DNA of 64,000 nucleotides from Octopus sinensis (taxonomy: Eukaryota): positions 23,002,001 to 23,066,000 of the forward strand of contig NC_043009.1 of assembly GCF_006345805.1 (NCBI RefSeq), in the 5' to 3' direction. Positions 22,208-53,423 of this stretch are shown in pieces. Position numbers and translations under genes: made by a program. Position 1 is the first letter of the stretch. Every line of letters starts with the position of its first letter. The notes beneath the pieces are model-generated. The model ran no database searches. It saw only the letters and a list, made by a program, of their open reading frames with translations, and was not told the origin of the DNA.

Positions 22208-22991
22208 ATGTTTGTAAATGAAAATCTTTTTGCAAATTTATGGTCTTGTATCAGTTTTCAGGATCATTCGACTAGAGACTGAGACCTATGGAAGTATGCT
22301 GTGCGTGAGAAGACCCGGCAGGACAAGTGAGACTATAACCCATGGCCTCTACCTGGGATGTAGCCAGTCGACTCATGCATACCTTTCCTTCTTGGGACAC
22401 AAAACTCCACTTGTGAAGGCCTGTTGAGGCAAGTGGAAATCAGAACCTAAATCGAAGTCGATCAACATCAATTGAAATTGCAGCTGTGATACCAGTGCCG
22501 GTGGCACGTAAGCGAACCATCCGATTCTGGCCGTTGCCAGTGCCGCCCCGACTGGCCTCCATGCCGGTGGCACGTAAAAAGCACTATCCGATCATGGCCG
22601 TTGCCAGCCTCGCCTGGCCCCCGTGCCAGTGGCACGAAAAAAGCACCATCCGACCGTGGCCGTTTGCCAGCCCCGTCTGGCACCTGTGCCGGTGGCACGT
22701 AAAAGGCACCCACTACACTCACGGAGTGGTTGGCATTAGAAAGGGCATCCAGCCATAGAAACATTGCCAGATCAGACTGGGCCTGGTGCAGCCTTCTGTC
22801 TTCCCAGACCCCAGCTGAACCATCCAACCCATGCTAGCATGGAAAGCGGACACTAAATGATGATGAGGCTGATGATGATTCATACAGTGTTATATCTCAT
22901 ATCAATCATGTGATATCTTACCTATCACTGCATAATATCTCATTTGCAACGTGTAAAATGTGACACTATGGTATATTATTCTTACTTACAG

Positions 22992-23206
22992 ATGTCATTT
23001 TATATAAAACCTCCTTCTGGAAATATTTCCCTGGAAAAATTGGAGAAATTTGCTTTCAAACGCCTAGACTTTCTCATTCGAGTGCTTGGTGCTGGTGATG
23101 ACTTTATGGCTTTGACTGATCTGGTCAAAGACTTGAGCCTAGTAGCTGACTCTGATTGCTTCATTGAAGGGACTAAGAAGGATCAAGTATCACATTTTAT
23201 TCTTAG
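22992..23206 (+). CDS. PRIM2: DNA primase large subunit-like (PRIM2/PriL paralogue), coding exon 1
   Basis: MSFYIKPPSGNISLEKLEKFAFKRLDFL...KKDQVSHFILR resembles PRIM2 LQFYLQPPSENISL...RRDHISHFILR. The ATG directly follows a TTACAG acceptor; GTAAGA donor (phase 2). Confidence 0.9.
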
Positions 23207-23596
23207 GTAAGAATCTTTGAATCCTCATACATTTTCCTCCTTTGTGATTCTAAGTGTCCCTGTTTCGTCTACTCCATGTTTTGAAGGTAAGGACAAGATG
23301 CAACTTTGTTGAAACAGTCCTTCACACAAAGCAAATTAAATAAAATTTGGGATATTTTGTGGAGGGGTAACAAGAACAGGGCAGTAAGAACAAAACAAGA
23401 CAGTAAAAACAGTATAAGACAGAACAAAGAGAATAACACAGTAAAAACAAATGATGAGGGCTGTTAAGCCAAGACGATGGAAAAATTATTCTGAACACTT
23501 GAGTAGACAACTTATGAGAGAGACAGGTCTGTCCTTGTGTTGTATGTCTTGTACTCTGTTTTTTCATCCTATGGTTGCAGAACTGTTTCTGGAGGG

Positions 23597-23696
23597 NNNN
23601 NNNNNNNNNNNNNNNNNNNNNNNNNNNNNNNNNNNNNNNNNNNNNNNNNNNNNNNNNNNNNNNNNNNNNNNNNNNNNNNNNNNNNNNNNNNNNNNN
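23597..23696. other. Assembly gap (100 N) in a PRIM2-like intron
   Basis: Run of 100 N. Confidence 1.
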
Positions 23697-24034
23697 CCTT
23701 TTGGGGTCGATAAATTAAGTACCAGTTACGTATTGGGGCTGATGTAATCGACTTAACACCTTTGTCTGCCCTTGTTTGTCCCCTCTATGTTTAGCCCCTT
23801 AAAAAGCCCCAATAAAGAAATAAGGTACTATTTGTTTTTACCAGGGCGCAACATACAGCCAGGAATTGAACTCATGACATTATGACTGTGAGTCAAATAC
23901 CCTAACCATCAAGCCACATGTCTATGCTGTCAAATATATTACTCCCAATATTCCGTTGTCTATTATTGTTTTGTAAATTCCTTCCCTCTTACTTTCATTC
24001 TGATTGTGACACTCTGTTTTCTCTTTATACTTAG

Positions 24035-24518
24035 AATGGCTTTTTCTAAAGATGCTGAGCTCTGGAGATTATTCAAGAAAGCCGAGACAAGTCTTTTCAA
24101 CTTTAGATTCCAATGCATGAAACCCGAAGAGATCTTTTGTTCTCTTAAACCAGTTTGGAAATCTGCAGCTACCATCTCAGAGAAAGAAAACATAAAACAA
24201 TTATCTTTTGAAGGTGTATTAAAAGTCTTTATGAACATTGCAGAGAGCTGTGGAGGCTTGTGGGCCAGTGTCATTGACAAATACTACTCCGGATGTAAAA
24301 CTGACTACTTTTGTATTCCTTTCATATATGTCTTGAAGTTGGTGTCTGAAAGGAGAGTACGACTTGAACGAGGAGATGCTCTTGTTCCGTTCTGTCGATT
24401 GCATCATGTCATGACGGCACTCTTTGAGCTTATGTTGGAATCCAGTCGGCAGCAGTTTCAGAAGATTCTATTGAACCTCATCGATGAAAGAATTGAAAAA
24501 CTGTTTGCTAATCTCCAG
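24035..24518 (+). CDS. PRIM2: PRIM2-like coding exon 2
   Basis: R-MAFSKDAELWRLFKKAETSLFNFRF...IPFIYVLKLVSERRVRLERGDALVP...DERIEKLFANLQ matches PRIM2 RLAYC..LRRWF...LRFRF, [25 protein letters not shown] and DERL. AG/GT boundaries; phase matches exon 1. Confidence 0.9.
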
Positions 24519-25320
24519 GTAAGAGCATTTACAGGTTTATCACCCACAGCTGTGATTGGTGGAGTGTCTGTTTGACTAAATGGAGTATCCATTGGCTGAG
24601 TGGGAAGTGTGTCTGTCAAACTCCTGGCTGTAGATTGAACTAATCTGTAATTTGCAATCTTGTCTTAATCCACCTGGTTGTAAATAGATACCATCAAGTG
24701 GCACATGCAGCTAGAGACTATAAACATCATCATCATCATCATCATTGTTTAACGTCTGCTTTCCATGCTAGCATGGGTTGGACGATTTGACTGAGGGCTG
24801 GTGAACCAAATGGCTGCACCAGGCTCCAATCTTGATCTGGCAGTTTCTACAGCTGGATGCCCTTCCTAACGCCAACCACTCTGAGAGTGTAGTGGGTGCT
24901 TTTATGTGCCACCAGCACGGGGGCCAGTCAGGCAGTACTGGCAACAACCTCACTCGAATGGTTTTAGGGCAGCGGACTCGCAGTCAGAGGATCGTGGTTT
25001 TGATTCCCAGACCGGGCATTGTGTGTGTTTATTGAGCGAAAACACCTAAAGCTCCACAAGGCTCCGGCAGGGGGTGGTGACGACCCCTGTTGTACTCTTT
25101 CACCCCAACTTTCTCTCACTCTTTCTTCCTGTTTCTTGAGTAATGCTGTGATGGACTGACGTCCCGTCCAGCTGGGGGTGGGAGGAACACATACGCCACG
25201 GAAACCGGGCCCATGAGCCTGGCTAGGCTTGAAAAGGGCGCATAAATAAAAAAAAATAAATAGATATTTATTATTTATTTTTTTTTTGTTTTGTTATTTA
25301 TTGTTTGTTTCTGTTTGTAG

Positions 25321-25479
25321 AAATATTTCCAGTTGAAATGTCTGCAGTGTGAAAGCAGCAGAACTGCCAGTAGTTTGTCTCATGACATAATTGATGCTGA
25401 AGAGAAGTATTTCCCTCCCTGTATGTCGTACCTCCACAGGGAGCTGCGGACCAAACACAGACTGAAACACCATGCTCGA
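25321..25479 (+). CDS. PRIM2: PRIM2-like coding exon 3 (first Fe-S Cys, FPPCM)
   Basis: KYFPPCMSYLHRELRTKHRLKHHAR matches PRIM2 [24 protein letters not shown]. Pyrimidine tract plus TAG at 25320 (alternative in-frame CAG at 25332); GTAAGA donor. Confidence 0.9.
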
Positions 25480-25730
25480 GTAAGATGGGTTTTTTTTTTT
25501 TTCTTTATCTTTTATTTGTTTTAGTCATTGCACTGTGGATATACTGGGGCACCAAGGGTTTTTTTTTTGTCAATTTGTTTGTCCCCAGTACTTATTATTT
25601 GGGAGTGGGGTACTTATTCTATCAGTCTCTTTTACCAAACTTTTAAGTTACACGGACATAAACAAACCAGCACAAGTTGTCAACTGGTATGTGGGGACAA
25701 ACACAAATGCTCCCTCTCCCCCACACACGT

Positions 25731-25783
<53 letters not shown>

Positions 25784-27044
25784 TCATTTATAACTGTTCA
25801 ACCCATGCTAGCATGTAAAACTTCTGAGTTTCAGGGGCATAAATAAACCAACACCAGCTGCAAAGTGGTGGGTGGGGAAACACACACACACATACACATG
25901 TATATATATTTATAACTGCTCATGCCCACATGTGAAATAGAAAGGTAAATGATGATGATATATGTATGTGATCAAACCGACTCCTATGAGGCTGCTGTTG
26001 GTCTCCATCATCAAGATTTATATTATGTACTAAAATCTATAAAGAGGAATGTTAAGAGCACCATCCGAGCATGATTTTTGCCTGGGCCGCTGACTGGCTC
26101 CTGTGCCGGTGGCACATAAAAAGCACCATTCGAGTGTGATCATTAGCAGCGTTGCCATACTGGCACTTGTGCTGGTGGCACGTGAACATCAACACTCAAG
26201 CGAGGTTGTTGCCAGTACCGCTGGACTGGCTTCTGTGCAGGTGACACGTAAAAAACACCATTTGAGCGTGGCCGTTGCCAGTACCACCTGACTGGCCCTT
26301 GTACGGTGGCAAGTAAAAGCACCCACTACACTCTTGGAGTAGTTGGCGTTAGGAAGGGCATTCAACTGTAGAAGCTCTGCCAGATCAGATTGGAGCCTGG
26401 TGCAGCCGTCTGGCTCACCAGTCCTCAGTCAAACTATCCAACCCATGCCAGTATGGAAAGCGGACGTTAAAAGATGATGATGATGATGGCGTGATGAGTG
26501 AAAAATCTAATGTTTTTGGAAAGAGCTTTTCTTCAAGCAGAAGTTGGAAGGAGAGAAATCAATGAAAGAGACTACTTAATTTCACTCCTTTCAGTTTTCC
26601 CAAAGAGCTCTGTCCAAAAACTTTGAATTTTCCACTCCTCATGGCAAGGTCAGTGTAATTGTGTGGTAAGAAGATTGTGTCCTAATCACATAGTTCCGGG
26701 TTCAGTTTCACTGTGTGGTACTTTGGGAAAGTGTCTTCTACTATAGCGTCAGGCCAACCAAAGCCTTGTGAGTGGATTTGGTTGGCAGAAACTGAAAGAA
26801 GCCCATAATATGTATATGTGTGTGTATCTTTGTTTCTGTGTCTGTCCCTCCATCACCACTTGGCAACCAGTGTTGGTGTATTTACATCTCTGTAACTTAG
26901 CAGTTCAGCAAAATAGACCAATGAAAGAAGTACCAGGCTTCAACAAATATGTATTGGAGTCAATTCATTTGACTAAAAATTCTTCAAGGCAGTGCCCCAG
27001 CATGGCCACAGTCTATTGACAAACATGTAAGAGAGAGATATCTA

Positions 27045-27250
27045 CAATGGGGTGCTGAAAAGTTCCTGGCTTTGGCTAAAAGAAAATACAGAAGGATCAG
27101 TTAATTATAATTTTATTCAACATATTCCCGTCTCAGATTCACACACTTATTGCAGGGGTCCTTCAATTTCTCTAAGCCCTGTAAAAGAACTTGGAAGATT
27201 GGACCTTCAACCAGCCTTTCATGATAACCTTAAAGCCAGAAACTTTTTAG
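27045..27250. mobile_element. mariner-type MITE
   Basis: GGGGTGCTGAAAAGTTCCTGGCTTT...AAAGCCAGAAACTTTTTAGCAC inverted ends; related sequence at about 41715-41880. Confidence 0.6.
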
Positions 27251-27584
27251 CACTCTTTCCTTCCTCCCTCCCTCCCCCCTTCCTTCCTTCCTTCTTTCCT
27301 TCCTCGCCCTCCCCCTCCCTTCCTTCCTTCCTTCCTTTAAAAGAGGGAGTTAACAAGCCTGAAAAATTATATAATCTTATGAACAATTACTCATCTCGGA
27401 CATTTGACCCTTCAGCTTTCAGATAATTTTTAGACTGACATTGTAGGGTAGGTTTGAGAGGCCAAATCTGACTGCTTTGATCATAAAGCAGGTAGAATAT
27501 TCAGGCCGGTTATGGCTGGTTTAAATGCTAAAGGAGTTAAATGTTTTCAGCCTTTTATATTTTGTCTTTTGTTTTCTTCAATAG

Positions 27585-27809
27585 ATCCGTTACACATTAT
27601 TCTTAAAGGAAGCAGGTCTGCCAGTTCATGAAGCAATTATGTTTTGGCGAAACGAGTACTCCCAGTCGTGTGCCGATGCTAAGACAGCAGGGAGTTGCAA
27701 TCACACCTGGCACAAAGATGAGAAACGCTACGTGTATAACATTCGACATCTCTATGGCTTAGAAGGTTCACGGGTTAACTACAGAGCCCACACTTGTTCT
27801 CACATCCAG
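27585..27809 (+). CDS. PRIM2: PRIM2-like coding exon 4
   Basis: IRYTLFLKEAGLPVHEAIMFWRNEY...RYVYNIRHLYGLEGSRVNYRAHTC matches QYGLFLKGIGL...FWKQEF...[23 protein letters not shown]. 75 codons, AG/GT boundaries. Confidence 0.92.
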
Positions 27810-28562
27810 GTATTAACTCCCTCATTTACCTTCTCACTCTCATTTATACACCTTTCTTTTCCTCTCTCTTTTATTTCTCTTTATCTCATTAAAAAAAAAA
27901 AATTTTTTTCTCACTCAGAATTGCTGAAGCATGGAATAAACTACTTCCATCAGTTGTTAGCAAGTGTTAGGTCACTGCATCTGTCAAAACTTCCATGGCC
28001 CTGAAATTCGCCAACAGTACACCTGATGTCCACCTACCTTTTTTTTTAATGACTCATTCAATGTTCACTTCCTGTGCTGTATACTATGTATTGTTCATGC
28101 TTTATTAGCTTCTTTTTCTGATGAGTTTTAATGCACCTGAGCATTGTATGCAATCAATTCGTTATCATTATTAATAGCTTTGTGGTAAGAAGTTTACTTC
28201 CTGACCACATGGTTGGAGGTTCAGTCCCAATGTGTAGCACTTTGGGTAAATGTCTTCTACTATAGACTTGGGTTGACCAAACCCTTGTGAGTGGATTTGG
28301 TAGATGGAAACGGAAAGAAGCCTGTCATGTGTATGTGTGTGTGTGTTTGTCCCCCACCACTGCTTGACAACCAGTGTTAATGTGTTTACATCCCCATAAC
28401 TTAGTGGTTCAGCAAAAGAGACTGATAGAATAAGTACTAAACTTTAAAAATAAATAAGTACTAAGGTCAGTCAGTTCATTCAAATATAAATTCTTCAAGG
28501 TATTGCCCCAGCATGGCTGCAGTCTAATGACTGAAACAAGTATAAAAAAAAAAAGACTTGTG

Positions 28563-28613
<51 letters not shown>

Positions 28614-29370
28614 CCTCCCTCCCTCTCTCACTCTCATTGTCTTGGCATCTCAAGGTAGTTGTGACCACCCCTGTTGACAAGCCATGTCATTTGTTTCCAG
28701 TCTTCCTTGAAAAACATGCCTGGCCATGAAGAAATATTACCTTCCCTTACAAACAAGTGAAGGTTGGTGACAGGAAGAGCATCTGACCACAGAAAATCTA
28801 CCTCAAGGAATTCTGTTCAATCCATGCAGGCAAAGAAAAGAACAATGGGAAGAAACCTTAACTTGGAACTCGGCACAACAGGAGGAACAATCAGTGGGAA
28901 GGAGCCTTATTGGCATGACAGGGAAGACAAGTTTTTTAACTGAGAATTTGATGGTTCCTTTGTTTTTCCCCTCTATGTCCACCACTGTCCTTTGTTTTCT
29001 GATTTTCTTTTTTTTTACTTGCTTTCCCTTTTCTTTTTCTTTGCTCTTCTCTCTCTTTATTCTTCTCACATTCTGCTGGGTTTTTTTAATTGCTTTTTCC
29101 ATTGTTTTTATACTTTACTTTTTATTTTATTTTCTTTCGCATTTGCTATCTTTTAACTTTTACTTGTTTCAGTCATTAGACTATGGCCATGCTGGGGCAC
29201 CACCTTCAAGTATTTTTTAGTCAAATGAATTGGCCCTAGTACTTTTTTTTAAGCCTGGTATTTATTCTATTGGTCTCCTGCTAAATCACTGGGGTGTAAA
29301 CAAACCAATACCTGTTGTCAGGTGGCGATGAAGGACAAACACACACACACACCTACAGCGCATACACATA

Positions 29371-29581
29371 TACCTTATTTTCCAGCATACAGGTCAAACT
29401 TTTCATATCAAAATTTACAGCCAAAAAATAAGGTAGGCTGGTTTACACCCCACGATGACATTGGAGAACCAAAAATTCCATGGGAAATGTAGCAAGATTT
29501 GGAAAGATAATGCTGTTTGAATGTTTACACTACATGTTTATATTCTATACTATATTGACTTGTATGCCAGAAAATACAGTA
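29371..29581. mobile_element. pogo/Tc1-type MITE
   Basis: Imperfect TIRs TACCTTATTTTCCAGCATACAGGTCAA and TTGACTTGTATGCCAGAAAATACAGTA. Confidence 0.55.
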
Positions 29582-30455
29582 TATAATGAGCTCCTTTCAT
29601 TTTCCATCTTCCAAATTCACTCACAAGACTTTGGTCACCCTGGGGTTATGGTAGAATGTACTTGCTGAAGATGCTCCGCAATGGGACTGAACCTGGAACC
29701 ATGTGTTTGGGAAGCGAACTTCTTATTTCTTTATTGCCCACAAGGGGCTAAACATAGAGGGGACAAACAAGGACAGACAAAGGGATTAAGTTGTTTACAT
29801 TGACCCGAGTGCATAACTGAAGGCGGCGAGCTGGCAGAAACGTTAGCACACCAGACGAAACTGGTACTTTATTTATCGACCCCGAAAGGATGAAAGGCAA
29901 AGTCCATGCTAGCATGGAAAGCGGACGTTAAATGATGATGATGATGATATATATATATATATATGTGACTGCGTGTGTACCGTTGGCGATTTTTTTTTCC
30001 TCCGTCTTCCCTTCTCTGGATCTTTCCTTTTCCCGTGTTTCTGATGTGTTAGCGGTATTTCGTCTGCCGCTACGTTTTGAGTTCAAATTCCGCTGAGGTC
30101 GACTTTGCCTTTCATCCTTTCGGGGTCGATTAAATAAGTACCAGTTACGCCTTAATAAGTACCAGTTACGACTTAATCCATTTGTCTGTCCTTGTTTGTC
30201 CTCTCTGTGTTTAGCCCCTTGTGGGTAGTAAAGAAATTGGTACTTAATTTATCAACCCTGAAAGGATGAAAGCAAAGTCGACCTCAGCAGAATTTGAACT
30301 CAGATGATAATGGCAGATGAAATACTGCTAAGCATTTTGCCCGGTGTGCTAACGTTTCTGCCATTGAAGTGAACTTCTTAAGCTCCATAGAAAATTCGTT
30401 ATTTTACATTGAGCCCAGTTATGATTGTCTTTTATTTCATTTTAATTTCCTTCAG

Positions 30456-31211
30456 GTTGCTACTGATGGTTGTCCCTTTGTAAGTTTTCATGAACAAAAT
30501 TTGAAGAAGTTACTGAAAGAAACTCCTGCAGACATCCAGGAAGACATCAAGAAATTGGTCCAGAAGAAACGTTATTGTGATGCTTGCAGAACATTTGTCG
30601 CTGCCAAATTTGAAAGAGCTTCTCCCGAGGATTGTTCTGTGGCACAAATGGAGAAACCTAAAGTGGAAAAAGTTGAAAACAGTAAAGAGAAATCTTTAAA
30701 TTCTTGCAGAGAAAAGCATCTGCTTTTGAGTAACACGACCGATTTTGATGGTGAGGAAGATGAAAAACAAAACAATGAAGAGCGCCTATGTGAAACTTTG
30801 AATCCTTTATCAGAGGAACTAATTAATTCAAAATCATTATCATCAAATAGCTTATCACCACCATCAAAAATTAGCAAGACTGTTTTAAATGACATCAATC
30901 AATCCCATACACGAATTAATCATTTGTCTTTGTGCTCTTCACATGTGGATGATGTAAACTTGGCAACAAGTTTGGCATCAGCTAAAAAGCTAGAACTAAA
31001 AGACTGTAAATTAGAACCAACAACTTTCTGCCATGAACAAGGTTCATCACAAAATCAAAGATCTGATTTTACCAAACATCAGATGTCTTCAGATATAAAA
31101 ACAGATCAAAGCAAAAATGCAGGACATTGTTTTAATTTGAAGCCAGTTCATTTTTATGAACTGTGCAAACATAGTTTGGAAAAGACAGAATCAAAACCAA
31201 AACTAAATTAG
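30456..31211 (+). CDS. PRIM2: PRIM2-like terminal coding exon (GCPF and DAC cysteines, long insertion, KPVHFY end motif)
   Basis: CTTCAG acceptor. DGCPF...RYCDAC matches HGCPF...HYQVAC. Open to TAG at 31209-31211. Confidence 0.88.
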   Translation, partial: VATDGCPFVSFHEQNLKKLLKETPADIQEDIKKLVQKKRYCDACRTFVAAKFERASPEDCSVAQMEKPKVEKVENSKEKSLNSCREKHLLLSNTTDFDGEEDEKQNNEERLCETLNPLSEELINSKSLSSNSLSPPSKISKTVLNDINQSHTRINHLSLCSSHVDDVNLATSLASAKKLELKDCKLEPTTFCHEQGSSQNQRSDFTKHQMSSDIKTDQSKNAGHCFNLKPVHFYELCKHSLEKTESKPKLN

Positions 31212-31221
31212 AAGAATATTT

Positions 31222-31638
31222 GGATCTTTTCTGTTTGAACGGCAGTTTTTAACTTAATTTCTAGGTAATTAAAAAATTTTAAACTTCGTATACTGGTAGA
31301 ATGTGTTTATAAAACATCTTTTTCTCTTGCCTTTATTGAGAAAATTCTATAGTTTGTAAGATATTTGTTGTTTTTTTTCTTCAATTTCAACCAATCAGTG
31401 ACGTCTATTGAGTTAAAAAGCATTCTGTGCCGTATGAATATGTCCCTCGTTTAAGAAACAGATTGGGTTTATTTACATTTGTGAAGAAAAAAAGATACCC
31501 TTCCTCCACCCCTAACCCTAACTAACCCTAACCCTAAAAGAGATTGAAATGCAATAGATCGATTCTAGGGTCATAATTATGGGTGGCAATTTCATATGAC
31601 ACCACTAGAAAAAACTGCTGTTCAAATCGAAAAGATCC
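31222..31638. mobile_element. Merlin-like MITE with an 8-bp TSD
   Basis: GGATCTTTTC...GAAAAGATCC TIRs, TSD GAATATTT (31214-31221 and 31639-31646). GG termini with an 8-bp TSD are Merlin/IS1016 hallmarks. Confidence 0.8.
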
Positions 31639-31885
31639 GAATATTTTTATATATTTATTTTTAATTGAGTAAATTGAAAGAAAATATGTGAAATGAATTG
31701 TTTGATTGGAGAATCTTAGAGTTTGATGTGAGCTGCAGTGAAAATAGCAGCATCAGTTTGATCTTGTCATGCAGAATGTAATGTACTGGGATGGATAAGT
31801 GTATCAACCCTTTTTGATACTAACCCATCCATGACTATCCTGCTTCAGTGATACAAACTTCCTGTTTGAAAGTGATTTAAATTAA

Positions 31886-37380: not shown

Positions 37381-38863
37381 ATTGATATAGATATATACCT
37401 GGCCACCGTTTTATGTCCCCTGTAACTTACCAGTTCGGCAAAAGAGAACTATAGAATAAGTACCAGTCTTAAAAAAAGGCGAGTACTGGGATCAATTTGT
37501 TTGACTAAAATTCTTCAAGGTGGTGCCCCAGCATGACCGCAGTCTAGTGATCGAAACGAAAGATAATAGATGCTGAGCCTGATACTCTGCTTGTTTCTTG
37601 TCCAGAAGGTTTATCATAATTAAGGTAAATTCCTAAGTGATACAAACATCAATTGCTTGAGTCTTCAGTATGAAATGTTTATTAACAACGTATTTTTACA
37701 GGAAGAAAAGAAAGAAAAAAAGCTATAAAAGATCAAATTATAGAGACCCACCACACCCCATAACTACCTCACCAAGGGAATAAAGAAGAAAAATGAGGGG
37801 TGGGCGGAATTAAGTAGCAGAAAATACATTTCTTTATTGCCCACAAGGGGCTAAACATAGAGAGGACAAACAAGGACAAACAAAGTGATTAAGTCGATTA
37901 CATCGACCCAAGTGCGAAACTGCTACTTTATTTATCGACCCCGAAAGGATGAAAGGCAAAGTCGACCTCGGTGGAATTTGAACTCAGAATGTAACGGCAG
38001 ACGAAATACCGCTAAGCATTTCGCCTCGCGCGCTAACGTTTCTACCAGCTCGCCGCAGAAGTGGGGAAGTAGCGGGTCGTATACCCCTAAACAAACGACT
38101 TGTTTAGCTGAACCTCGCGGACATGATTGCATAGGTGTTGCCGCGGAGAATGGCTAGCGACACCCATTGCAGCAGCCACCCTACCTTGCGGGGATCATTT
38201 ATCAGATGGGTTGCAGTTATTTTGATTTTGCGGGGTAAATCGGTAAGACTGAAATACAGCTATTTCGGTTAGTGTATGAAGTAAGGGAGATAACCAAAAT
38301 TCTTCGGTTATCTCCCTTACAGGGACGGTAGAAAAATAAAACTTGAAGATATCACAAACTGTTTTCCTGATAGTGACTAAAGCTATGACAATTGTTGGTG
38401 TCACAGATGTTTCTCTCCTTAGCCTGTATAGTACACTTCATCGGAAGAGAACAACGAAGAGTGCATTAGGTTTCGCTTCAATTACAATTCAAGGGAGATA
38501 ATCGTGTGGAACGAAGGGATGCAACTTTAATTCAGACAAGCCTCAAAAGGCTTAATCTGCGTGTCTGTCACTCGACTTGCTAAACATGACCGCTAAATAT
38601 TCCTCAAATTTTAGTTTAAAAAAAAAAATAAGCAATAAAACAATCAAAACACGCGTCTTGCCTAAAAATAAAATAAAAATGAAAAGACTGTATCCGAACA
38701 GGTGGCGCGTTTTTTGATTAAAAGTCGACATGCTCTTAGTTAAGCTATATTTAAACAAGTGACTGATTGTAATTTTATCGAATTCGAGGATCAGGGAAAC
38801 GAGGAAAGTAAACTGTTGTAAAATTTCTTCGAAACAAATTACCAATATCTCAGTGTGTGTATG

Positions 38864-38944: not shown

Positions 38945-41475
38945 AATCTTTCTACAAAAGGCACAAGGTCTGAAATTCGTGGGGAGGGGTTAAGTCTATT
39001 CCATAGACCCCAGTGCTTCACTGGTACTTAATTTATCGACCCCGAAAGGATGAAAGGCAAAGTCGACCTCAACAGAATTTGCACTCAGAACGTAGCGATA
39101 GGGGCGAAATACCGCTTAGCGTTCCGCCTGGCGTGCCAGCGATTCTGACAGCTCGCCTTGTTGATGATGATCCTTTCTACTATAAACACAAGGTCTGAAA
39201 TTTTGGAGGAGAGGATTAGTCAATTAGATCGACCCCGAAAGGACGAAAGGTAAAGTCGACCTCAGCGGTATTTGAAATCAGAACAAAGACGGATGAAATG
39301 CCGCTATGTACACCCACCCCCCACCAGTGTTTTCTCTCCGAAGGGTTGGGGCTTTAACTGTGTTATACAAGTTTGTTGTACAGTGTCATTAATAAGTGTT
39401 TATCCTAGTAGTTTTAAATATGTAGACGATTATTTCAATAATAATAATAATCCTTTCTACTATAGGCACAAGGCCTAAAATTCTGTGGGAGGGGCCAGTC
39501 GATTAGATCGACCCCAGTACACAACTGGTACTTAATTTATCGACCCCGAAAGTATGAAAGGCAAAGTCGACCTCAGCGGAATTTGAACTTAGAATGTAGC
39601 GACGGGCGAAATACTGCAAAGCATTTTGCCCGGCATGTTAACGATTCTGCCAGCTCGCCACCCTATTTCAATAATAGCAATAATGATAGAACCCCCCCCC
39701 CCTCTAAACGAAATTTCGAGCCATTTTTGCTTTTATGCGGTCGAGTAGTGTATCCTTGGTTATGGCATAAGAACGATCAGAATTACAATTGGCTTCTCAT
39801 TTACTATTGCACTTGGCAATAAACGTGTCTCATATATACGCAGATACATACATGGATACATATGGGCATATGGGTATGTGTGCAGGTTAGCTCTAAAGCT
39901 GTGGTTCTCAGCGGGGGTCCATATGATCTTTGGGGGTTCATATGATCCTTAGGAGTCCATATGATCCTTGGGGTTTCATATGATCCTAGAGGCTCATATG
40001 ACCCTTGGGGGTCCATATGATCCTAGGGGGATTCATATGATCCTTGGTTGGGTCCATATGATCTTGGGAGGTCTGCATGATCCTTGGGAGTCCATATGAT
40101 CCTTGGGAGTCCGTATGACCCTTGGGGGTTCATATGATCTTGGGGGCCCATATAAGATTTTGTTGTTAAAATTTAAATTGGTTATATTTCCACAATACAC
40201 AAAATATTATAACAATTCTTGTTAATGCAATTCCTAATAACATTTAATTATAAAAACATAATGGGATTTTTACAAAACAGTGAACGGCTCTGAGGGTCCC
40301 GAAGAGTAAAATAGGAACCAAAGGGGTCCATAGATAAAAAATGGTTGAAAAACGTTGTACTAAATTTTAACTCTAAGACGAAGGTTTTCGAAATAAATTA
40401 ACCGTAGGATTATTATTTTTTTTTACAAATTTTTTCGTCTTCTGATTCCAATTTCTTCGTAATAGATTATAAATCAAATATGAAAATAAGAAAAAAAAAT
40501 CCTGTCTGTATTTAAAAGTATTTCATAGAACGTTAATTTGGATAGGGAATCAATAATTATATTAGTTTCAAATGTCGCACAAGGCCAGCAATTTCGGGGG
40601 AGGATGTAAGTCAATTACGACGCCCCTCTTAACTCGACTTGTACCTATTTTCAGAGATCCCGAAAAGATGAAAAGTGAAGTCGACCTCGGCGGAATTTGA
40701 ACTCAGAACGTAAAGACGGATGAAATGCTGCTAAATATTTTGCCCAGTACGTTAACGATTCTGCCTGCTCACTGCGTTAATATATAAAAAAAATAGATAA
40801 TCACGATAATAATCGTTTCACATTTTTGACACAAGGCCAGTAATTTTGGTGGGGAGGGTAAGTCGTTTACATCACCCCAGTGCTCGACCGGTAATTAATT
40901 TATCCACCCCGAAAGGATGAAAGGTAAAATCAACCTCAGCGGAATTTGAACTCAGAACGTAAAGGCGGACGAAATATCGCTAAACCTTTCGCCCAGCGTG
41001 TAAACGTTTCTTATTTCTTTACTGCCCACAAGGGGCTAAACATAGAAGGGACAAACAAAGACATACAAAGGGATTAAGTCGATTACATCGACTCCGGTGC
41101 ATAACTGGTACTTAATTTATCGACCCCGAAAGGATGAAAGACAAAGTCGACCTCGGCGGAATTTGAATTCAGAACATAATGGCAGACGAAATACGGCTAT
41201 GCATTTCGCCCGGCGTGCTAACGATTCTGCCAGCTTACGGCCCTTAATAATAATGATAATGATCCTTTCTAGTATAGGCACAAGGCCTGAAATTGGGGCA
41301 GGGAGATAGTCGATTACATAAACCCCAGTACTCGACTGGTACTGTTTTCATCGACCCCCGAAAAGATAAAAAAGCAAAGTCGACCTCGGCGGAATTTGAA
41401 CTCAGAAGGTATAGACGGATGAAATGCTGCGAAGCATTTCGCCCGATATGCTAACGATTCTGCCAGCTCACTGCC
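38945..41475 (-). mobile_element. Cluster of about 7 SINE family B copies (head GGCGAGCTGGCAGAA, GAGTTCAAATTCCGCCGAGGTCGAC B-box region)
   Basis: Repeated GACCCCGAAAGGATGAAAGGCAAAGTCGACCTC core. Other copies at about 7482, 8345, 10250, 15645, 20865, 29727, 30050, 37826, 42855, 48935, 53022 and 54915. Confidence 0.88.
39900..40352. mobile_element. hAT(Charlie)-like MITE containing a ~19-20 bp minisatellite
   Basis: CTGTGGTTCTCAGC...GGTTGAAAAACGTTG ends; about 12 GGGGTCCATATGATCCTT-like units at 39912-40155. Confidence 0.55.
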
Positions 41476-42112: not shown

Positions 42113-42157
<45 letters not shown>

Positions 42158-42400
42158 TGTTGTATGTATGTATGTATGTGTGTGTGTATATGTTTGTGTG
42201 TCGGTGTTTGTCCCCCAACATCAATTGACAACCAATGCTGGTGTGTTTACGTCCCCGTAACTTAGCGGTTCGGCAAAAGAAACCGATAGAATAAGTACTA
42301 GGCTTACAAAGAATAAGTCCTGGGGTCGATTTGCTCGATTAAAGGTGGTGCTCCAGCATGGTCACAGTCAAATGACTGAAACAAGTAAAAGAGGAAAGAG
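41950..42400 (+). mobile_element. SINE family A full-length copy
   Basis: Same consensus as the 17213 and 21813 copies. Confidence 0.9.
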
Positions 42401-43194
42401 TTTTTATAGTCACACATACATAACAGAGTGATCTCCCTTGCAATACGAAAGCTACGCAAGCCATCTCAAGTTAAATAAGGCATACCTACACAAGTGTGCC
42501 CATACCGACCGTTTTTTTTTCCTCATAATTTCCAGAAAATTGGATATTTTAAAATGAAATTCACTACAAATACCTTTCAGATGGTGTAGATTACGACTAT
42601 ATCGGAAGTTTTTGTGTAGGTAAGCCGAAAATAACGGTATTAAGGAGCAATTACGGGAACATCATTACATATTTTTGGAATGTAAGCGATGGTGTTTATT
42701 TATGACCTAGACAGGACACGTTACCGGGTATATAACCTTCGGCGACATCCACATCTTGACATCGATGCGGTCTGTTCAAATTCAAATTCAAAATCTGTAA
42801 AATTTCAGAGGGCTGCGTCCTACTCAACAACATTGATAATGATTTTAAATTTTGACATGAGGCCAGAAATTTCGTGGGAGGGATACGTCGATTACAACTG
42901 GTACTTATTTTATTGAGTCTTAAAGGATGAAAGGCAAAGTCGACCGCGGCAGAATTTGAACTATTCATAGACTAAGGTGGTTTTGTTTCGAAATATATCC
43001 GGAAAGTATAATGAAGGATGCTTTTGATAGGACCCTATGGAGGAGGTACCTGGAATCACTACCCCAGACATGCCTCCCAGGAAAAGCAAGCCGTGAATAT
43101 GGATAGATGGATGGATCATAGTGATGGAACCAGCCAGCTTCAAAGTACAGGGACCATTATAATAACGGTGGAAATATATATATATATATATATA

Positions 43195-43707
43195 TCTATA
43201 TATAAACTGTAGTTGTGTGAGTGTCTGTCCCCTTCGATTTAGATTCCTAATCTACTCTCCCACATTTTGCGGTGCAGTTTAACCGAATTCGGGTATCTTA
43301 TAGTCGTGATTCATATCGAGCCCGTCTGAGTATTAGCGCGCGTCTACGATGAGTCTACGATTTTAAAAATAATTTAACATCATTTTTTATTCATTTTAAT
43401 GCATATTTTTCGTGTGTCGATGGCGGCGGAGTTGGCGTCCATGGTCCAACCTGCACCTGTTTGCTTCTCCCCCCTTCTTCCCTCCCTCGTGAAGCTGTGT
43501 TGGAAGGGAGTGTAAGGAAATCAACGTGTCGTAAAGCGTTGTCAAGGAGACCAGCATTCTTTTAGAACAACGACTTCATGGCTTGAAGACACCAAAACCG
43601 AAATCGCTAAAGAAGCCCGAATTGGCATTTATAAGGGAAGTAACTCTCTAAAAATGCTTATATAGTTATTTCCCTTACAAACCCGAGCACGCCGGGCGAT
43701 ACTGCTA

Positions 43708-43708
<1 letters not shown>
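43195..43708 (+). mobile_element. Non-autonomous Helitron
   Basis: A|TC start, CCCG-agcacgc-CGGG hairpin, CTAG|T end. Confidence 0.85.
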
Positions 43709-43804
<96 letters not shown>

Positions 43805-44044
43805 CTTTGGCTGTGTGGTAAGTCGCTTGCTAATGAACCACATGGTTCCGGGTTCAGTCCCACTGCGTGGCACCTACATGGAAAGTGTCTTCCACTGTAG
43901 CCTCGGGCCAACCAAAGCCTTGTGAGTGGATTTGGTAGACGGAAACGGAAAGAAGCCCGTCGTATATATGTTATATATAATATATATATATATATATAAA
44001 TTATATAAATATATATATATATAATATATATATGTATATGTATG

Positions 44045-44097
<53 letters not shown>

Positions 44098-44271
44098 GTA
44101 CATGTTTGTGTGTTATGTTGTTCCCCCCCAACATCGCTTGACACCCGATGCTGGTGTGTTTACGTCCCCGTAACTTAGCGGTTCGGCAAAAGAGACGATA
44201 GAATAAGAACTAGGCTTACAAAGAATAAGTCCTGGGGTCTATTTGCTCGAGTAAGAGAGTTGTGTGTGGTG

Positions 44272-44314
<43 letters not shown>

Positions 44315-44324
44315 ATAAACATAT

Positions 44325-44361
<37 letters not shown>

Positions 44362-44894
44362 GGAGAGAGAGAGAGAATAGAAGAGAGAGAGAGAGAGAGA
44401 GATAGATGAGAGAAAGAACGCGCCTGAAGGCTAGAGGCTGGATTGTGTTTGTGAGCGACTATATGTCAATCTTTTGGGGATAGCAGTCGAGCATGTTCCT
44501 CTGTGTGTGCTTTTCTGAAAGCGTCTGTGAGGGAAAGACTGAAATGGGGCAGGGGGTATTCGGGAGAGGGCGCGGTTCTAGGAGCTGAGGCACGTTAGAA
44601 GAGACGAGACGAAGGGAGGGACTGGTTTTTCGGGTGGTGGAAAGAGGGCTCTTGGTAGAATTGCTATCCAATAGGTTCAGGCTCATGTCTACAACGAGAA
44701 ATTGGTTATGTTGAAAACCAAGTTGATGACCATCAAACAAAAATAATAAGGATCTCCGTCAATTTCGATGATAAATGTTTAGTTTTACCTTAGTCACACA
44801 TCTAGGTCAATAGACACAAGCAAATTCACACATACATCAAATCATTCAAACAAACACACGAACATACACATAGATACAATCAAGTAAGTACGCT

Positions 44895-44943
<49 letters not shown>

Positions 44944-45642
44944 TCTATCTATCTATCTATCTATCTATCTATATACATACATAAACATTAAATTACTTAA
45001 AAGGAATACACGCACTCAATAAATGTTTCAAACGAACATACATACAGGAAAAAACTCACATCCCACAGGAATAACAACCAGTGAAAGCAGACGGTGTTCA
45101 ACGCACCAGCATATTAACACAACAGTCACCGTCATACTTTTCTTCAAAATCCATATAGTAAGGGGAAGTAATAGCTCTTATCATATATTACCTGATGAGT
45201 AAAGTTATAGCGAAACTAAATAGTTCTAATGCTATGTAGCATTGAAGTTCCTTTTACTTAATGCTACACACACACATACACACGCACACGCACACAAACG
45301 TATACACACACACAGCTGTGTGTATGAAGGCGCGTGGCCTAGTGTTTCGATTTCCGGATCGGATGGCGTATTGTGTTATTGAGCAAAACACTTGATTTCG
45401 CGTTGCACTAGTGGGTATGAAAGCGCTAGAATTGTTGACAAGTCGGCAGAAATGCTTTACGGTGTATCTTCCGCCTCTCTACATTCTGAGTTCAAATCTC
45501 ATCATCCCTGGAGAAGGCATCGGGGAACCACTCCAGTCTTAATGCCAAGTCTAGACTTGGATGGCCGTAGTTCCAGTAATCTACATAACGGTGGTAGGCA
45601 AGTGGGAGAAGGTTAACATGCATAAAATCTATCAAGCAGCCC

Positions 45643-45676
<34 letters not shown>

Positions 45677-45766
45677 GGGAGAGTTTACGAAAAAAACAAA
45701 AAACGAAGACAGGTGGTGTACAAAACAAACAGATGTATTAGTATAACGCTCAGGAATAGAAAAAGT

Positions 45767-45802
45767 CTTTTACGTTTCGAGCCTATGCTCTTCTACAGAA
45801 AG
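45767..45802 (-). ncRNA. Minimal hammerhead ribozyme motif (variant core)
   Basis: CTTT CTGTAGA A GAGC ATAG GCTC GAAAC GTA AAAG; the core has T in place of the conserved A6. Confidence 0.5.
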
Positions 45803-46394
45803 GGACACAGAAAAAACAAGGAGAGAAAAAAATGTGTGTAGTGGCTAATGATCTATCATATATATAATACAAAATGGGACAGGAACGCAAAACATCCGGA
45901 GAGTTAGGTGATACAAAAATGTGACAATAAAACATCCAGATAGACGATACAAAGAAAAAAAGGACGGGTCATTCGGAGTTTTCTATCCCTCAGTCGAGAC
46001 CAGATTATCTTCGCAATCGGCTGATTATACTCGAGATTGCTTCAATCTGGCAGCCCCCCCAAGGAAACATAAGCTAAGAGCATTAGATTCCTGGGAAGAA
46101 GAAAAGCAGCGAATGTATACGAAAACAAGGACGAAAAAAAAAACGGAGAATGTTACACAAATACAATAAGAATAATAATAACAGGACATAACAACAGGTG
46201 TCTTTCGACTAAGGACGAATTAAATTAAGCTGGCATGTGTGGAAATAAAGCCTTTATATATATAATATATTATATATATATATATATATAATATATATTA
46301 TATATATATATATATATAATGCACTGATCCGTGATAGAAAATTCAACAAAAAAGTATTCCATTCTATGGTGAGAGATAAAATATCTATTTAAAG

Positions 46395-50565: not shown

Positions 50566-50656
<91 letters not shown>

Positions 50657-53021: not shown

Positions 53022-53423
53022 TATTTCTTTATTGCCCACAAGGGGCTAAACGTAGAGGGGACAAACAAGGACAGACAAAGGGATTAAGTCGATTACATCG
53101 ACGCCAGTGCGTAACTGGTACTTAATTTATCGACTCCGAAAGAATGAAAGGCAATGTCGACCTCGGCGGAATTTGAACTCAGAACGTAACGGCAGACGAA
53201 ATACCTATTTCTTTACTACCCACAAGGGGCTAAACACAGAGAGAACAAACAAGGACAGACAAACGGATTAAGTCGATTATATCGACTCCAGTGCGTAATT
53301 GGTACTTATTTAATCGACCCCGAAAGGATGAAAGGCAAAGTCGACCTCGGCGGAATTTGAACTCAGAACGTAGCGGCAGACGAAATACCGCTAAGCATTT
53401 CTCCCAGCGTGCCAGCTCGCCTT
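53022..53423 (-). mobile_element. Dimeric SINE family B insertion with a 16-bp TSD
   Basis: Two tandem bodies flanked by ACACCATGGGAACCTT at 53006-53021 and 53424-53439. Confidence 0.85.

What the first reader, a model, noticed from the sequence alone, without database searches (positions are those of the whole stretch)
22992..31211. Divergent second primase large subunit (PRIM2-like paralogue) with an intact Fe-S ligand set
Seen: five exons splice in frame to ~612 aa. All four 4Fe-4S cysteines are present (FPPC ~267, HTC ~357, GCPF ~367, DAC ~405), as are the template/primer-binding motifs LKHHAR and YVYNIRH. Established: the PRIM2/p58 C-terminal domain binds the cluster through C287/C367/C384/C424 and the primer 5' triphosphate through R302/H303/R306. 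Inference: several normally highly conserved motifs are altered (HGGR to HHAR, YGLFLKGIG to YTLFLKEAG, R302 to K, HPNQFF to KPVHFY), the N-terminal ~25 residues are missing, and there are unique inserts. This suggests a paralogue of unknown function beside a canonical PRIM2, possibly part of an alternative primase complex.
Basis: partly seen in the sequence, partly recalled or inferred. Interest (0 to 1): 0.8.

Follow-up and report, generated by a model that had tools for sequence, protein, structure and literature searches.

The report
Ancient second primase large-subunit paralogue
This octopus gene is an intact but divergent second copy of the DNA primase large subunit, separate from the normal copy on another chromosome; it belongs to an old gene family found across invertebrate animals that I could not find described in the papers I searched, and it may mark a second kind of primase.

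Summary
Five GT-AG exons (22992-31211, + strand) splice in frame to 612 aa. This is 100% identical to an NCBI model from Octopus sinensis. The N gap lies inside intron 1, next to a repeat, and removes no coding sequence.

The protein has both PriL domains, all four 4Fe-4S cysteines (C267, C357, C367, C405), and the residues matching human H303 and R306. O. sinensis has a canonical PRIM2 (518 aa, 11 coding exons) on another chromosome. In the tree the window protein falls in a separate clade (100/99 support).

This is not an octopus oddity. The clade spans molluscs, annelids, rotifers, arthropods, echinoderms, hemichordates and amphioxus. It has its own invariant signature and three or four shared intron positions, none shared with canonical octopus PRIM2. 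No vertebrate member was seen.

Conservation is retained in the Fe-S domain and in the small subdomain that binds the catalytic subunit. It is largely lost in the helical subdomain that tethers Pol alpha. My inference is an Fe-S regulatory subunit of an alternative primase not coupled to Pol alpha. The partner, the Fe-S content and the activity are untested. I found no literature on this family.

The parts
22992..23206 (+). Coding exon 1 (aa 1-72, phase 2 end). The start Met opens the family-typical MSFYIKPPSG. The ATG directly follows an acceptor-like ttacttacag, so a non-coding 5' exon upstream is possible.
23207..24034 (+). Intron 1 (GT-AG, phase 2 inside the Arg codon of HFILR). Position and phase are shared with the paralogues of Amphiura, Branchiostoma and Cloeon.
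23597..23696 (.). Assembly gap (100 N) inside intron 1. Its right flank is a truncated interspersed repeat. It does not touch coding sequence.
24035..24518 (+). Coding exon 2 (aa 72-233): most of the PriL N-terminal domain, including the small alpha/beta subdomain (aa ~160-192).
25321..25479 (+). Coding exon 3 (aa 234-286): linker, FPPCM with Fe-S ligand C267 (TGT 25420-25422), and HRLKHHAR (25456-25479) with H283 and R286, which match human H303 and R306.
27585..27809 (+). Coding exon 4 (aa 287-361): IRYTLFLKEAG, the family-specific insert with C324/H326/W328 (about 27666-27710), RYVYNIRHLYGLEG, and Fe-S ligand C357 (TGT 27795-27797).
30456..31211 (+). Coding exon 5 (aa 362-612 plus TAG). It holds Fe-S ligands C367 (30471-30473) and C405 (30585-30587), a disordered Ser/Leu/Lys/Glu/Asn-rich insert at aa 420-584 (30630-31124), and the conserved terminal KPVHFY helix at aa 591-607 (31143-31193).

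Best explanation
SHOWN. The locus is an intact gene for a 612-aa two-domain PriL protein. It belongs to an ancient PRIM2-like paralogue family, present in protostomes and in non-vertebrate deuterostomes, that is distinct from canonical PRIM2. Canonical PRIM2 lies on another O. sinensis chromosome. The family keeps the four 4Fe-4S cysteines, the His that stacks on the initiating purine (human H303), the Arg that binds the beta/gamma phosphates (human R306), and the Y345/Y347/R350/H351 block. It has its own invariant substitutions (H300R, G310T, G315E, N352L, K355L, Y365H, H382G), an inserted C-x-H-x-W motif, no N-terminal tail, and its own conserved intron set.

INFERRED. The C-terminal domain folds around a 4Fe-4S cluster and holds the 5'-triphosphate end of an initiating nucleotide or nascent primer, as p58C does. 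The conserved small alpha/beta subdomain docks an AEP catalytic subunit, most likely PRIM1. The helical subdomain that tethers Pol alpha in canonical PRIM2 has lost most of its invariant residues. The paralogue therefore probably forms a primase that is not coupled to Pol alpha, for example for a specialised or backup priming task.
For: Identity and second locus:
- Gene model and identity.
- Pfam PF26466 + PF04104.
- AF2 is confident for residues 1-419 and 591-607.
- Foldseek gives only PRIM2 chains at the top; against p58C with DNA:RNA (5f0q) TM is 0.76 and rmsd 2.8 A.
- Canonical PRIM2 in the same assembly.

Separate, old family:
- The split has 100/99 support, and the topology inside the paralogue clade follows phyla.
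- 15 or more species carry both genes.
- Paralogue introns are shared across four phyla with identical phase, and none of them coincides with the 10 canonical octopus introns.
- A cephalopod-type relative (P0002, 54% identity) is an uninterrupted ORF on short, mRNA-like contigs from three runs.

Conserved residues:
- In 30 paralogues C267, C357, C367, C405, H283, R286 and W328 are invariant.
- The roles of R306 and H303 are taken from PMC5333051.
- Retention of canonical sites that are at least 90% conserved is 20% in the helical subdomain (13/66), 60% in the small subdomain (6/10) and 53% in the Fe-S domain (36/68). The subdomain roles come from PMC5333051.
Against: - No partner, Fe-S content, expression in O. 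sinensis or activity was tested.
- The small-subdomain figure rests on only 10 sites.
- Seven canonical invariants near the nucleic-acid face are replaced (H300R, K355L and others), so the ligand may differ.
- Paralogue branches are about twice as long as canonical ones (Octopus to Liolophura path 1.59 against 0.72), which could also mean relaxed constraint.
- In the free tree the clade lies outside all canonical eukaryotic PRIM2. Its age is therefore unresolved; a stem-bilaterian origin is not rejected but is less likely (p-AU 0.093).
Confidence: 0.7

Rival explanations
1. It is the fast-evolving sole PRIM2 orthologue of Octopus, the replicative large subunit itself.
For: NCBI names it 'DNA primase large subunit isoform X1' without '-like'.
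Against: A canonical 518-aa PRIM2 exists in the same assembly on another chromosome. It is about 51% identical to bivalve PRIM2 and clusters at 90% identity or more with the O. vulgaris and O. bimaculoides proteins. The tree separates the two with 100/99 support.
Confidence: 0.01
2. It is a decaying or functionless duplicate, kept only as an open reading frame by chance or by recent origin.
For: It has long branches, a 165-aa disordered insert, and many canonical invariant sites lost in the N-terminal domain.
Against: The frame is intact and the splice sites are canonical. The family persists across at least seven phyla, with 23 invariant columns that include all Fe-S ligands. Intron positions are conserved, and relatives yield mRNA-like contigs.
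Confidence: 0.04
3. It no longer serves a primase. The Fe-S domain is used on its own as a binder or sensor of 5'-triphosphate nucleic acid ends, or as a redox-sensitive DNA-binding protein, in another pathway.
For: The triphosphate and purine binders are kept, while neighbouring invariant residues are swapped and a new C-x-H-x-W motif is added. The Pol alpha-tethering subdomain is unconstrained.
Against: The whole N-terminal domain is retained and folds confidently. Its PriS-binding small subdomain keeps 6 of 10 canonical invariant sites. That is hard to explain without a catalytic partner.
Confidence: 0.15
4. It pairs with a different AEP catalytic subunit, either a PRIM1 paralogue or PrimPol, rather than with PRIM1.
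For: Nothing direct. It is plausible because paralogous subunits often co-duplicate. Archaeal PriX shows that extra PriL-like subunits exist (the abstract of PMC5700102 listed, plus my own knowledge).
Against: PrimPol carries its own zinc-finger domain for the initiating nucleotide (abstract of PMC5934617).
Confidence: 0.1

Closest known systems
Canonical eukaryotic DNA primase large subunit (PRIM2 / p58 / Pri2 / PriL; Pfam PF26466 + PF04104)
   Same: The two-domain architecture and fold are the same. So are the four 4Fe-4S cysteines, H299, H303, R306, the LFLK motif, W327, Y345, Y347, R350, H351, the GxEG motif, and the terminal P-x-x-[FY][FY] helix.
   Different: It forms a separate clade (100/99). 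Identity to canonical proteins is 27-32%, against about 50% among canonical metazoan PRIM2. It lacks the N-terminal ~26 residues. Substitutions fixed in the family are H300R, G310T, G315E, F331Y, N352L, K355L, Y365H and H382G. It has a 10-aa insert with C/H/W and a long disordered insert. Only 20% of canonical invariant sites are kept in the helical subdomain. None of its intron positions matches one in canonical octopus PRIM2.
Archaeal PriX (a third primase subunit related to the PriL C-terminal domain, Sulfolobus)
   Same: It is a precedent for an extra, diverged PriL-like protein working beside the normal large subunit (abstract of PMC5700102).
   Different: By my own recollection, not tested here, PriX is a small single-domain protein without an Fe-S cluster. 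The octopus protein is full length and has all four ligands.
PrimPol C-terminal UL52-like zinc-finger domain
   Same: It is a functional analogue: a non-catalytic module that holds the 5' initiating nucleotide triphosphate for an AEP (abstract of PMC5934617).
   Different: The fold is unrelated, it binds zinc rather than Fe-S, and it is fused to its catalytic domain.

Membership tests
PriL superfamily (eukaryotic/archaeal primase large subunit) | N-terminal PriL domain plus C-terminal Fe-S domain | tested here: met
   PF04104 E 7e-42. PF26466 + PF04104 are precomputed for P0001. Foldseek matches both domains to PRIM2 chains.
PriL superfamily (eukaryotic/archaeal primase large subunit) | Four cysteine ligands of the 4Fe-4S cluster (human C287, C367, C384, C424) | tested here: met
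   C267, C357, C367 and C405 align to the human ligands. In the 30-paralogue alignment they are invariant. In the 32-paralogue alignment C357 and C367 are in all 32 rows, and C267 and C405 are in 31, with a gap in the remaining row. Actual cluster binding is not testable here.
PriL superfamily (eukaryotic/archaeal primase large subunit) | Residues holding the initiating purine and the 5'-triphosphate (human H303, R306) | tested here: met
   H283 and R286 are invariant in the family. Their roles are taken from PMC5333051.
PriL superfamily (eukaryotic/archaeal primase large subunit) | Forms a heterodimer with the catalytic subunit PriS/PRIM1 | not testable with these tools
   The only evidence is indirect: the small alpha/beta subdomain keeps 6 of 10 canonical invariant sites.
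Canonical PRIM2 orthologue group | Groups with canonical PRIM2 of related species in a tree | tested here: not met
   The split has 100 UFBoot / 99 SH-aLRT. P0325, not the window protein, sits with canonical PRIM2.
Canonical PRIM2 orthologue group | Canonical invariant residues H300, G310, G315, K355 and H382, and the N-terminal extension | tested here: not met
   The window protein has R280, T290, E295, L345 and D365, and its alignment starts at human residue 27.
Canonical PRIM2 orthologue group | Gene structure shared with the canonical gene of the same genome | tested here: not met
   None of the 4 paralogue introns coincides with any of the 10 introns of O. sinensis PRIM2. The nearest is 6 codons away.
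Canonical PRIM2 orthologue group | Tethers Pol alpha through the helical N-terminal subdomain | not testable with these tools
   Only 13 of 66 canonical invariant sites of that subdomain are kept in paralogues. This suggests loss but does not prove it.
PRIM2-like paralogue clade of bilaterians (unnamed) | Signature: M[STA]FY..PP.G start, HRL.H..R, YTLFLK[ED], C.H.W insert, IRHLYGLEG, GGCPF, KP..[FY]Y end | tested here: met
   All elements are present, except D365 in place of the first G of GGCPF.
PRIM2-like paralogue clade of bilaterians (unnamed) | Shared intron positions and phases | tested here: met
   Introns 1 and 4 are shared with Amphiura, Branchiostoma and Cloeon, and intron 3 with Amphiura and Branchiostoma. 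Intron 2 lies within 4 alignment columns of a Cloeon intron of the same phase.

The most novel reading that the evidence does not exclude
Most invertebrate bilaterians carry a second, ancient primase regulatory subunit ('PriL2'). With PRIM1 it forms a 4Fe-4S primase that is not tethered to Pol alpha and serves a task other than bulk Okazaki priming. The vertebrate lineage lost this subunit, which would explain why it has escaped study.
Probability: 0.3. Interest if true: 0.8.

Novelty: new variant of a known kind. Interest (0 to 1): 0.62.

Why it matters
The Pol alpha-primase complex is usually described as having one large subunit per genome in animals. Here a second large subunit with an intact Fe-S ligand set has been conserved since at least the protostome-deuterostome ancestor. 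It has its own invariant residues around the primer 5'-end pocket.

- This would point to a second mode of priming, or of 5'-triphosphate end handling, in most animal phyla.
- It offers a natural variant for testing ideas about the role of the p58C cluster and its neighbouring residues.
- It corrects database naming. In O. sinensis the paralogue is called 'DNA primase large subunit', while the true orthologue is called '-like'.

Tried and rejected
- The word-indexed search with a 30-paralogue profile added almost nothing beyond the single-sequence search. The distribution therefore rests on the HMMER representative search and the cluster look-ups.
- Six literature searches for the paralogue or for the three SRA runs found no description of this family. 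This is not proof that none exists, because subscription journals are not held.
- Kilkenny et al. 2013 (PMC3791718), which gives the interface residues, is not held. I used subdomain-level conservation instead of residue-level interface checks.
- A viral origin was checked by scanning IMG/VR with family patterns. No relative was found.
- Exact look-ups failed for the Mizuhopecten and Liolophura paralogues, so the intron comparison used Amphiura, Branchiostoma and Cloeon.
- The window has no tRNA or Rfam matches.
The position of C324/H326/W328 relative to the cluster could not be measured.
Full report
**The sequence**

The window is from Octopus sinensis, assembly GCA_006345805.1, chromosome record CM016871.1 near 23.0 Mb.

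Reading 22500-31700 and testing splice combinations gives one in-frame model:
- exon 1: 22992-23206
- exon 2: 24035-24518
- exon 3: 25321-25479
- exon 4: 27585-27809
- exon 5: 30456-31211

Every intron is GT-AG, the CDS is 1839 nt, and the product is 612 aa. It is 100% identical over its full length to the NCBI model 'DNA primase large subunit isoform X1 [Octopus sinensis]' (P0001). tblastn of 33 relatives against the whole window hits only these five exons, and the hit ends fall on the exon borders.

**The gap**

- The only N run in the window is 23597-23696. It lies in intron 1, 390 nt from the donor and 338 nt from the acceptor.
- Its right flank is a truncated interspersed repeat with at least 17 copies in the window. 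That is a typical place for an assembly gap.
- Exon 1 ends in phase 2 and joins exon 2 as AG|A (Arg72), reading SHFILR|MAFSK.
- The paralogues of a brittle star, an amphioxus and a mayfly have an intron in the same codon and phase with no residues in between.
- A cephalopod-type relative, read from mRNA-like contigs, is colinear across the junction.

No coding sequence is missing. The true intron length stays unknown.

**What the protein is**

- Pfam finds DNA_primase_lrg (PF04104, E 7e-42). The precomputed domains also include the PriL N-terminal domain PF26466.
- Against PDB sequences, the best hits are Xenopus and human PRIM2 (E 4e-37 to 4e-36). They align from residue 2 of the query to residue 27-29 of the full-length chains.
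- AlphaFold2 with a 75-row alignment gives a confident model for residues 1-419 and for a terminal helix at 591-607. Residues 420-584 score below 50 pLDDT.
- Foldseek against the PDB returns only PRIM2/Pri2 chains at the top. The Fe-S domain superposes on human p58C bound to DNA:RNA (5f0q) with TM 0.76 and rmsd 2.8 A.

**Is it a paralogue?**

Yes. I used a canonical bivalve PRIM2 (P0121, Mercenaria), found through the representative search, as the query. The large protein collection then returned canonical PRIM2 of Octopus vulgaris and Argonauta. The 90% cluster of the O. vulgaris protein contains XP_029640104.1 of O. sinensis (P0325, 518 aa). Its gene lies in the same assembly on CM016866.1 at 81.62 Mb and has 11 coding exons.

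A maximum-likelihood tree of 79 proteins (LG+C20 PMSF) splits 42 paralogue-type rows from 37 canonical rows, with 100 UFBoot / 99 SH-aLRT. The canonical rows include fungi-like and protist representatives.
- The window protein falls in a 12-row molluscan paralogue clade (97/90).
- P0325 falls among the canonical metazoan PRIM2 proteins, nearest to Argonauta and other molluscs.

**A wide, old family**

HMMER against 1.84 billion cluster representatives found 1646 PriL-type proteins. The top 100 or so form the paralogue type. Named members come from:
- molluscs: Mizuhopecten, Mytilus, Mya, Solemya, Liolophura, Haliotis, Patella, Gigantopelta, Aplysia, Bulinus, Bradybaena, Argonauta
- an annelid (Owenia) and a rotifer (Didymodactylos)
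- chelicerates: Limulus, Parasteatoda, Ornithodoros, Pycnogonum
- crustaceans: Homarus, Penaeus, krill
- insects: Cloeon, Bacillus rossius, Aquatica
- echinoderms: Amphiura, Diadema, Asterias, Holothuria
- Saccoglossus and Branchiostoma

At least 15 of these species also have a canonical PRIM2. No vertebrate, cnidarian or sponge member was among the named ones, although many representatives are unnamed.

Inside the clade the topology follows phyla, as expected for vertical descent. No relative was found in viral contigs.

In the free tree the clade attaches outside all canonical eukaryotic PRIM2. Forcing it together with bilaterian canonical PRIM2 costs 30.8 log-likelihood units, with p-AU 0.093. 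A stem-bilaterian duplication followed by acceleration is therefore not rejected. The age is open.

**Gene structure**

I mapped exons exactly for four paralogues and for canonical octopus PRIM2.
- Paralogue intron 1 (phase 2 in the Arg of HF.LR) and intron 4 (phase 0, four residues after the second Fe-S cysteine) are shared by Octopus, Amphiura, Branchiostoma and Cloeon.
- Intron 3 (phase 0, between H..R and IQYTLF) is shared by the first three.
- Octopus intron 2 lies within four alignment columns of a Cloeon intron of the same phase.
- None of these coincides with any of the ten introns of canonical O. sinensis PRIM2. The nearest is a phase-2 intron six codons downstream of paralogue intron 1.

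The paralogue thus had its own intron set in the bilaterian ancestor. This fits an origin as a processed copy that later gained introns, or a very old duplication. I cannot tell which.

**What is kept and what is changed**

In 30 paralogues the invariant columns include C267, C357, C367, C405, H283, R286 and W328. C324 and H326 are nearly invariant.

I compared 32 paralogues with 43 canonical proteins, with human numbering taken from the PDB alignment.
- Shared conserved residues: H299, H303, R306, L311-K314, W327, Y345, Y347, R350, H351, G354, E356, G357 and Y362. [quoted passage not shown]
- Conserved in both groups but different: H300R, G310T, G315E, F331Y, N352L, K355L, Y365H and H382G.
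- The paralogues add about 10 residues carrying C-x-H-x-W before RY.YNIRH.
- The long insert (420-584, rich in Ser, Leu, Lys, Glu and Asn) lies between the helix that carries the fourth cysteine and the conserved terminal helix. Its length varies widely in the family.

**Where constraint was lost**

PMC5333051 states that the small subdomain of p58N binds p49, and that the larger helical subdomain binds the Pol alpha C-terminal domain. The table shows how many sites that are at least 90% conserved in canonical PRIM2 are kept by the paralogues.

| Region | Canonical sites | Kept in paralogues | Variable in paralogues |
|---|---|---|---|
| Helical subdomain and linker | 66 | 13 (20%) | 35 (53%) |
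| Small alpha/beta subdomain | 10 | 6 (60%) | 2 (20%) |
| Fe-S domain | 68 | 36 (53%) | 12 (18%) |

In the Fe-S domain, 7 further sites are replaced by another conserved residue. The human crystallisation construct p58(19-253) binds p49, so the missing N-terminal tail need not matter for that contact.

**Most likely mechanism**

Shown: this is an intact, conserved PriL paralogue with a complete ligand and triphosphate-binding set.

Inferred:
- It is an Fe-S protein that grips the 5'-triphosphate end of an initiating nucleotide or primer.
- It docks an AEP catalytic subunit, most likely PRIM1, through the small subdomain.
- It is not tethered to Pol alpha, giving an alternative primase.

The swapped residues and the C-x-H-x-W insert near the binding face suggest a changed substrate or changed regulation.

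Rivals:
- a stand-alone end-binding or redox protein;
- a partner other than PRIM1;
- a dead gene, which is unlikely given the conservation and the mRNA-like contigs;
- the sole orthologue, which is refuted.

**Novelty**

The protein is already in NCBI as an automatic prediction, under a name that hides its nature. Six literature searches found nothing on a second animal primase large subunit. I rate it a new variant of a known kind: a distinct, ancient PriL subfamily.

**Verdict**

The function remains an inference.

Noticed in passing
window 23697-23800, and at least 17 other places (e.g. 30116-30220, 37845-37948, 41030-41133, 53040-53142): An interspersed repeat of about 100 bp (ggggtcgataaattaagtaccagttacg...gtttagcccct), 78-89% identical between copies, on both strands. 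One copy is cut by the assembly gap. Other SINE-like elements (…catgctagcatggaaagcggacgttaaatgatgatgatg) also fill the introns.
   Followed up: partly
window 31510-31533: A short telomere-like run (CCCTAA-type units, one imperfect) about 300 nt after the stop codon. A poly(A)-signal-like hexamer lies at 31268.
   Followed up: no
window 22968-22991: An in-frame ATG 8 codons upstream (MVYYSYLQ) of the conserved start. The conserved ATG directly follows an acceptor-like ttacttacag, so a non-coding 5' exon further upstream is possible. All relatives start at M[STA]FY.
   Followed up: partly
window 61108-61656 and 61998-62726 (+ strand), GC 0.48-0.55: A LINE-like retrotransposon fragment: an endonuclease/exonuclease/phosphatase domain (E 2e-9) followed by a reverse transcriptase (E 1e-13), in a G+C-rich block unlike the rest of the window.
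   Followed up: partly
L002 (canonical O. sinensis PRIM2), intron after codon 108, compared with window intron 1: The canonical gene has a phase-2 intron exactly six codons downstream of the paralogue's phase-2 intron 1, in a region that aligns without ambiguity (SHFILRLAYCR|S against SHFIL|R). This may be coincidence or an 18-nt shift of an old intron. It is unexplained.
   Followed up: no
proteins P0023/P0033 (Bulinus truncatus) and P0030/P0032 (Bradybaena similaris): These two gastropods each have two paralogue-type proteins on different contigs, so the family has duplicated again in some lineages.
   Followed up: no
NCBI names of P0001 and P0325: In O. sinensis the divergent paralogue is named 'DNA primase large subunit isoform X1', and the true PRIM2 orthologue is named 'DNA primase large subunit-like'. 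The automatic names are effectively swapped.
   Followed up: yes
window 28566-28609, 50574-50639, 42114-46318: Microsatellites: (CT)22 in intron 4, (TA)33 at 50.6 kb, and a cluster of (TA)n runs between 42 and 46 kb.
   Followed up: no
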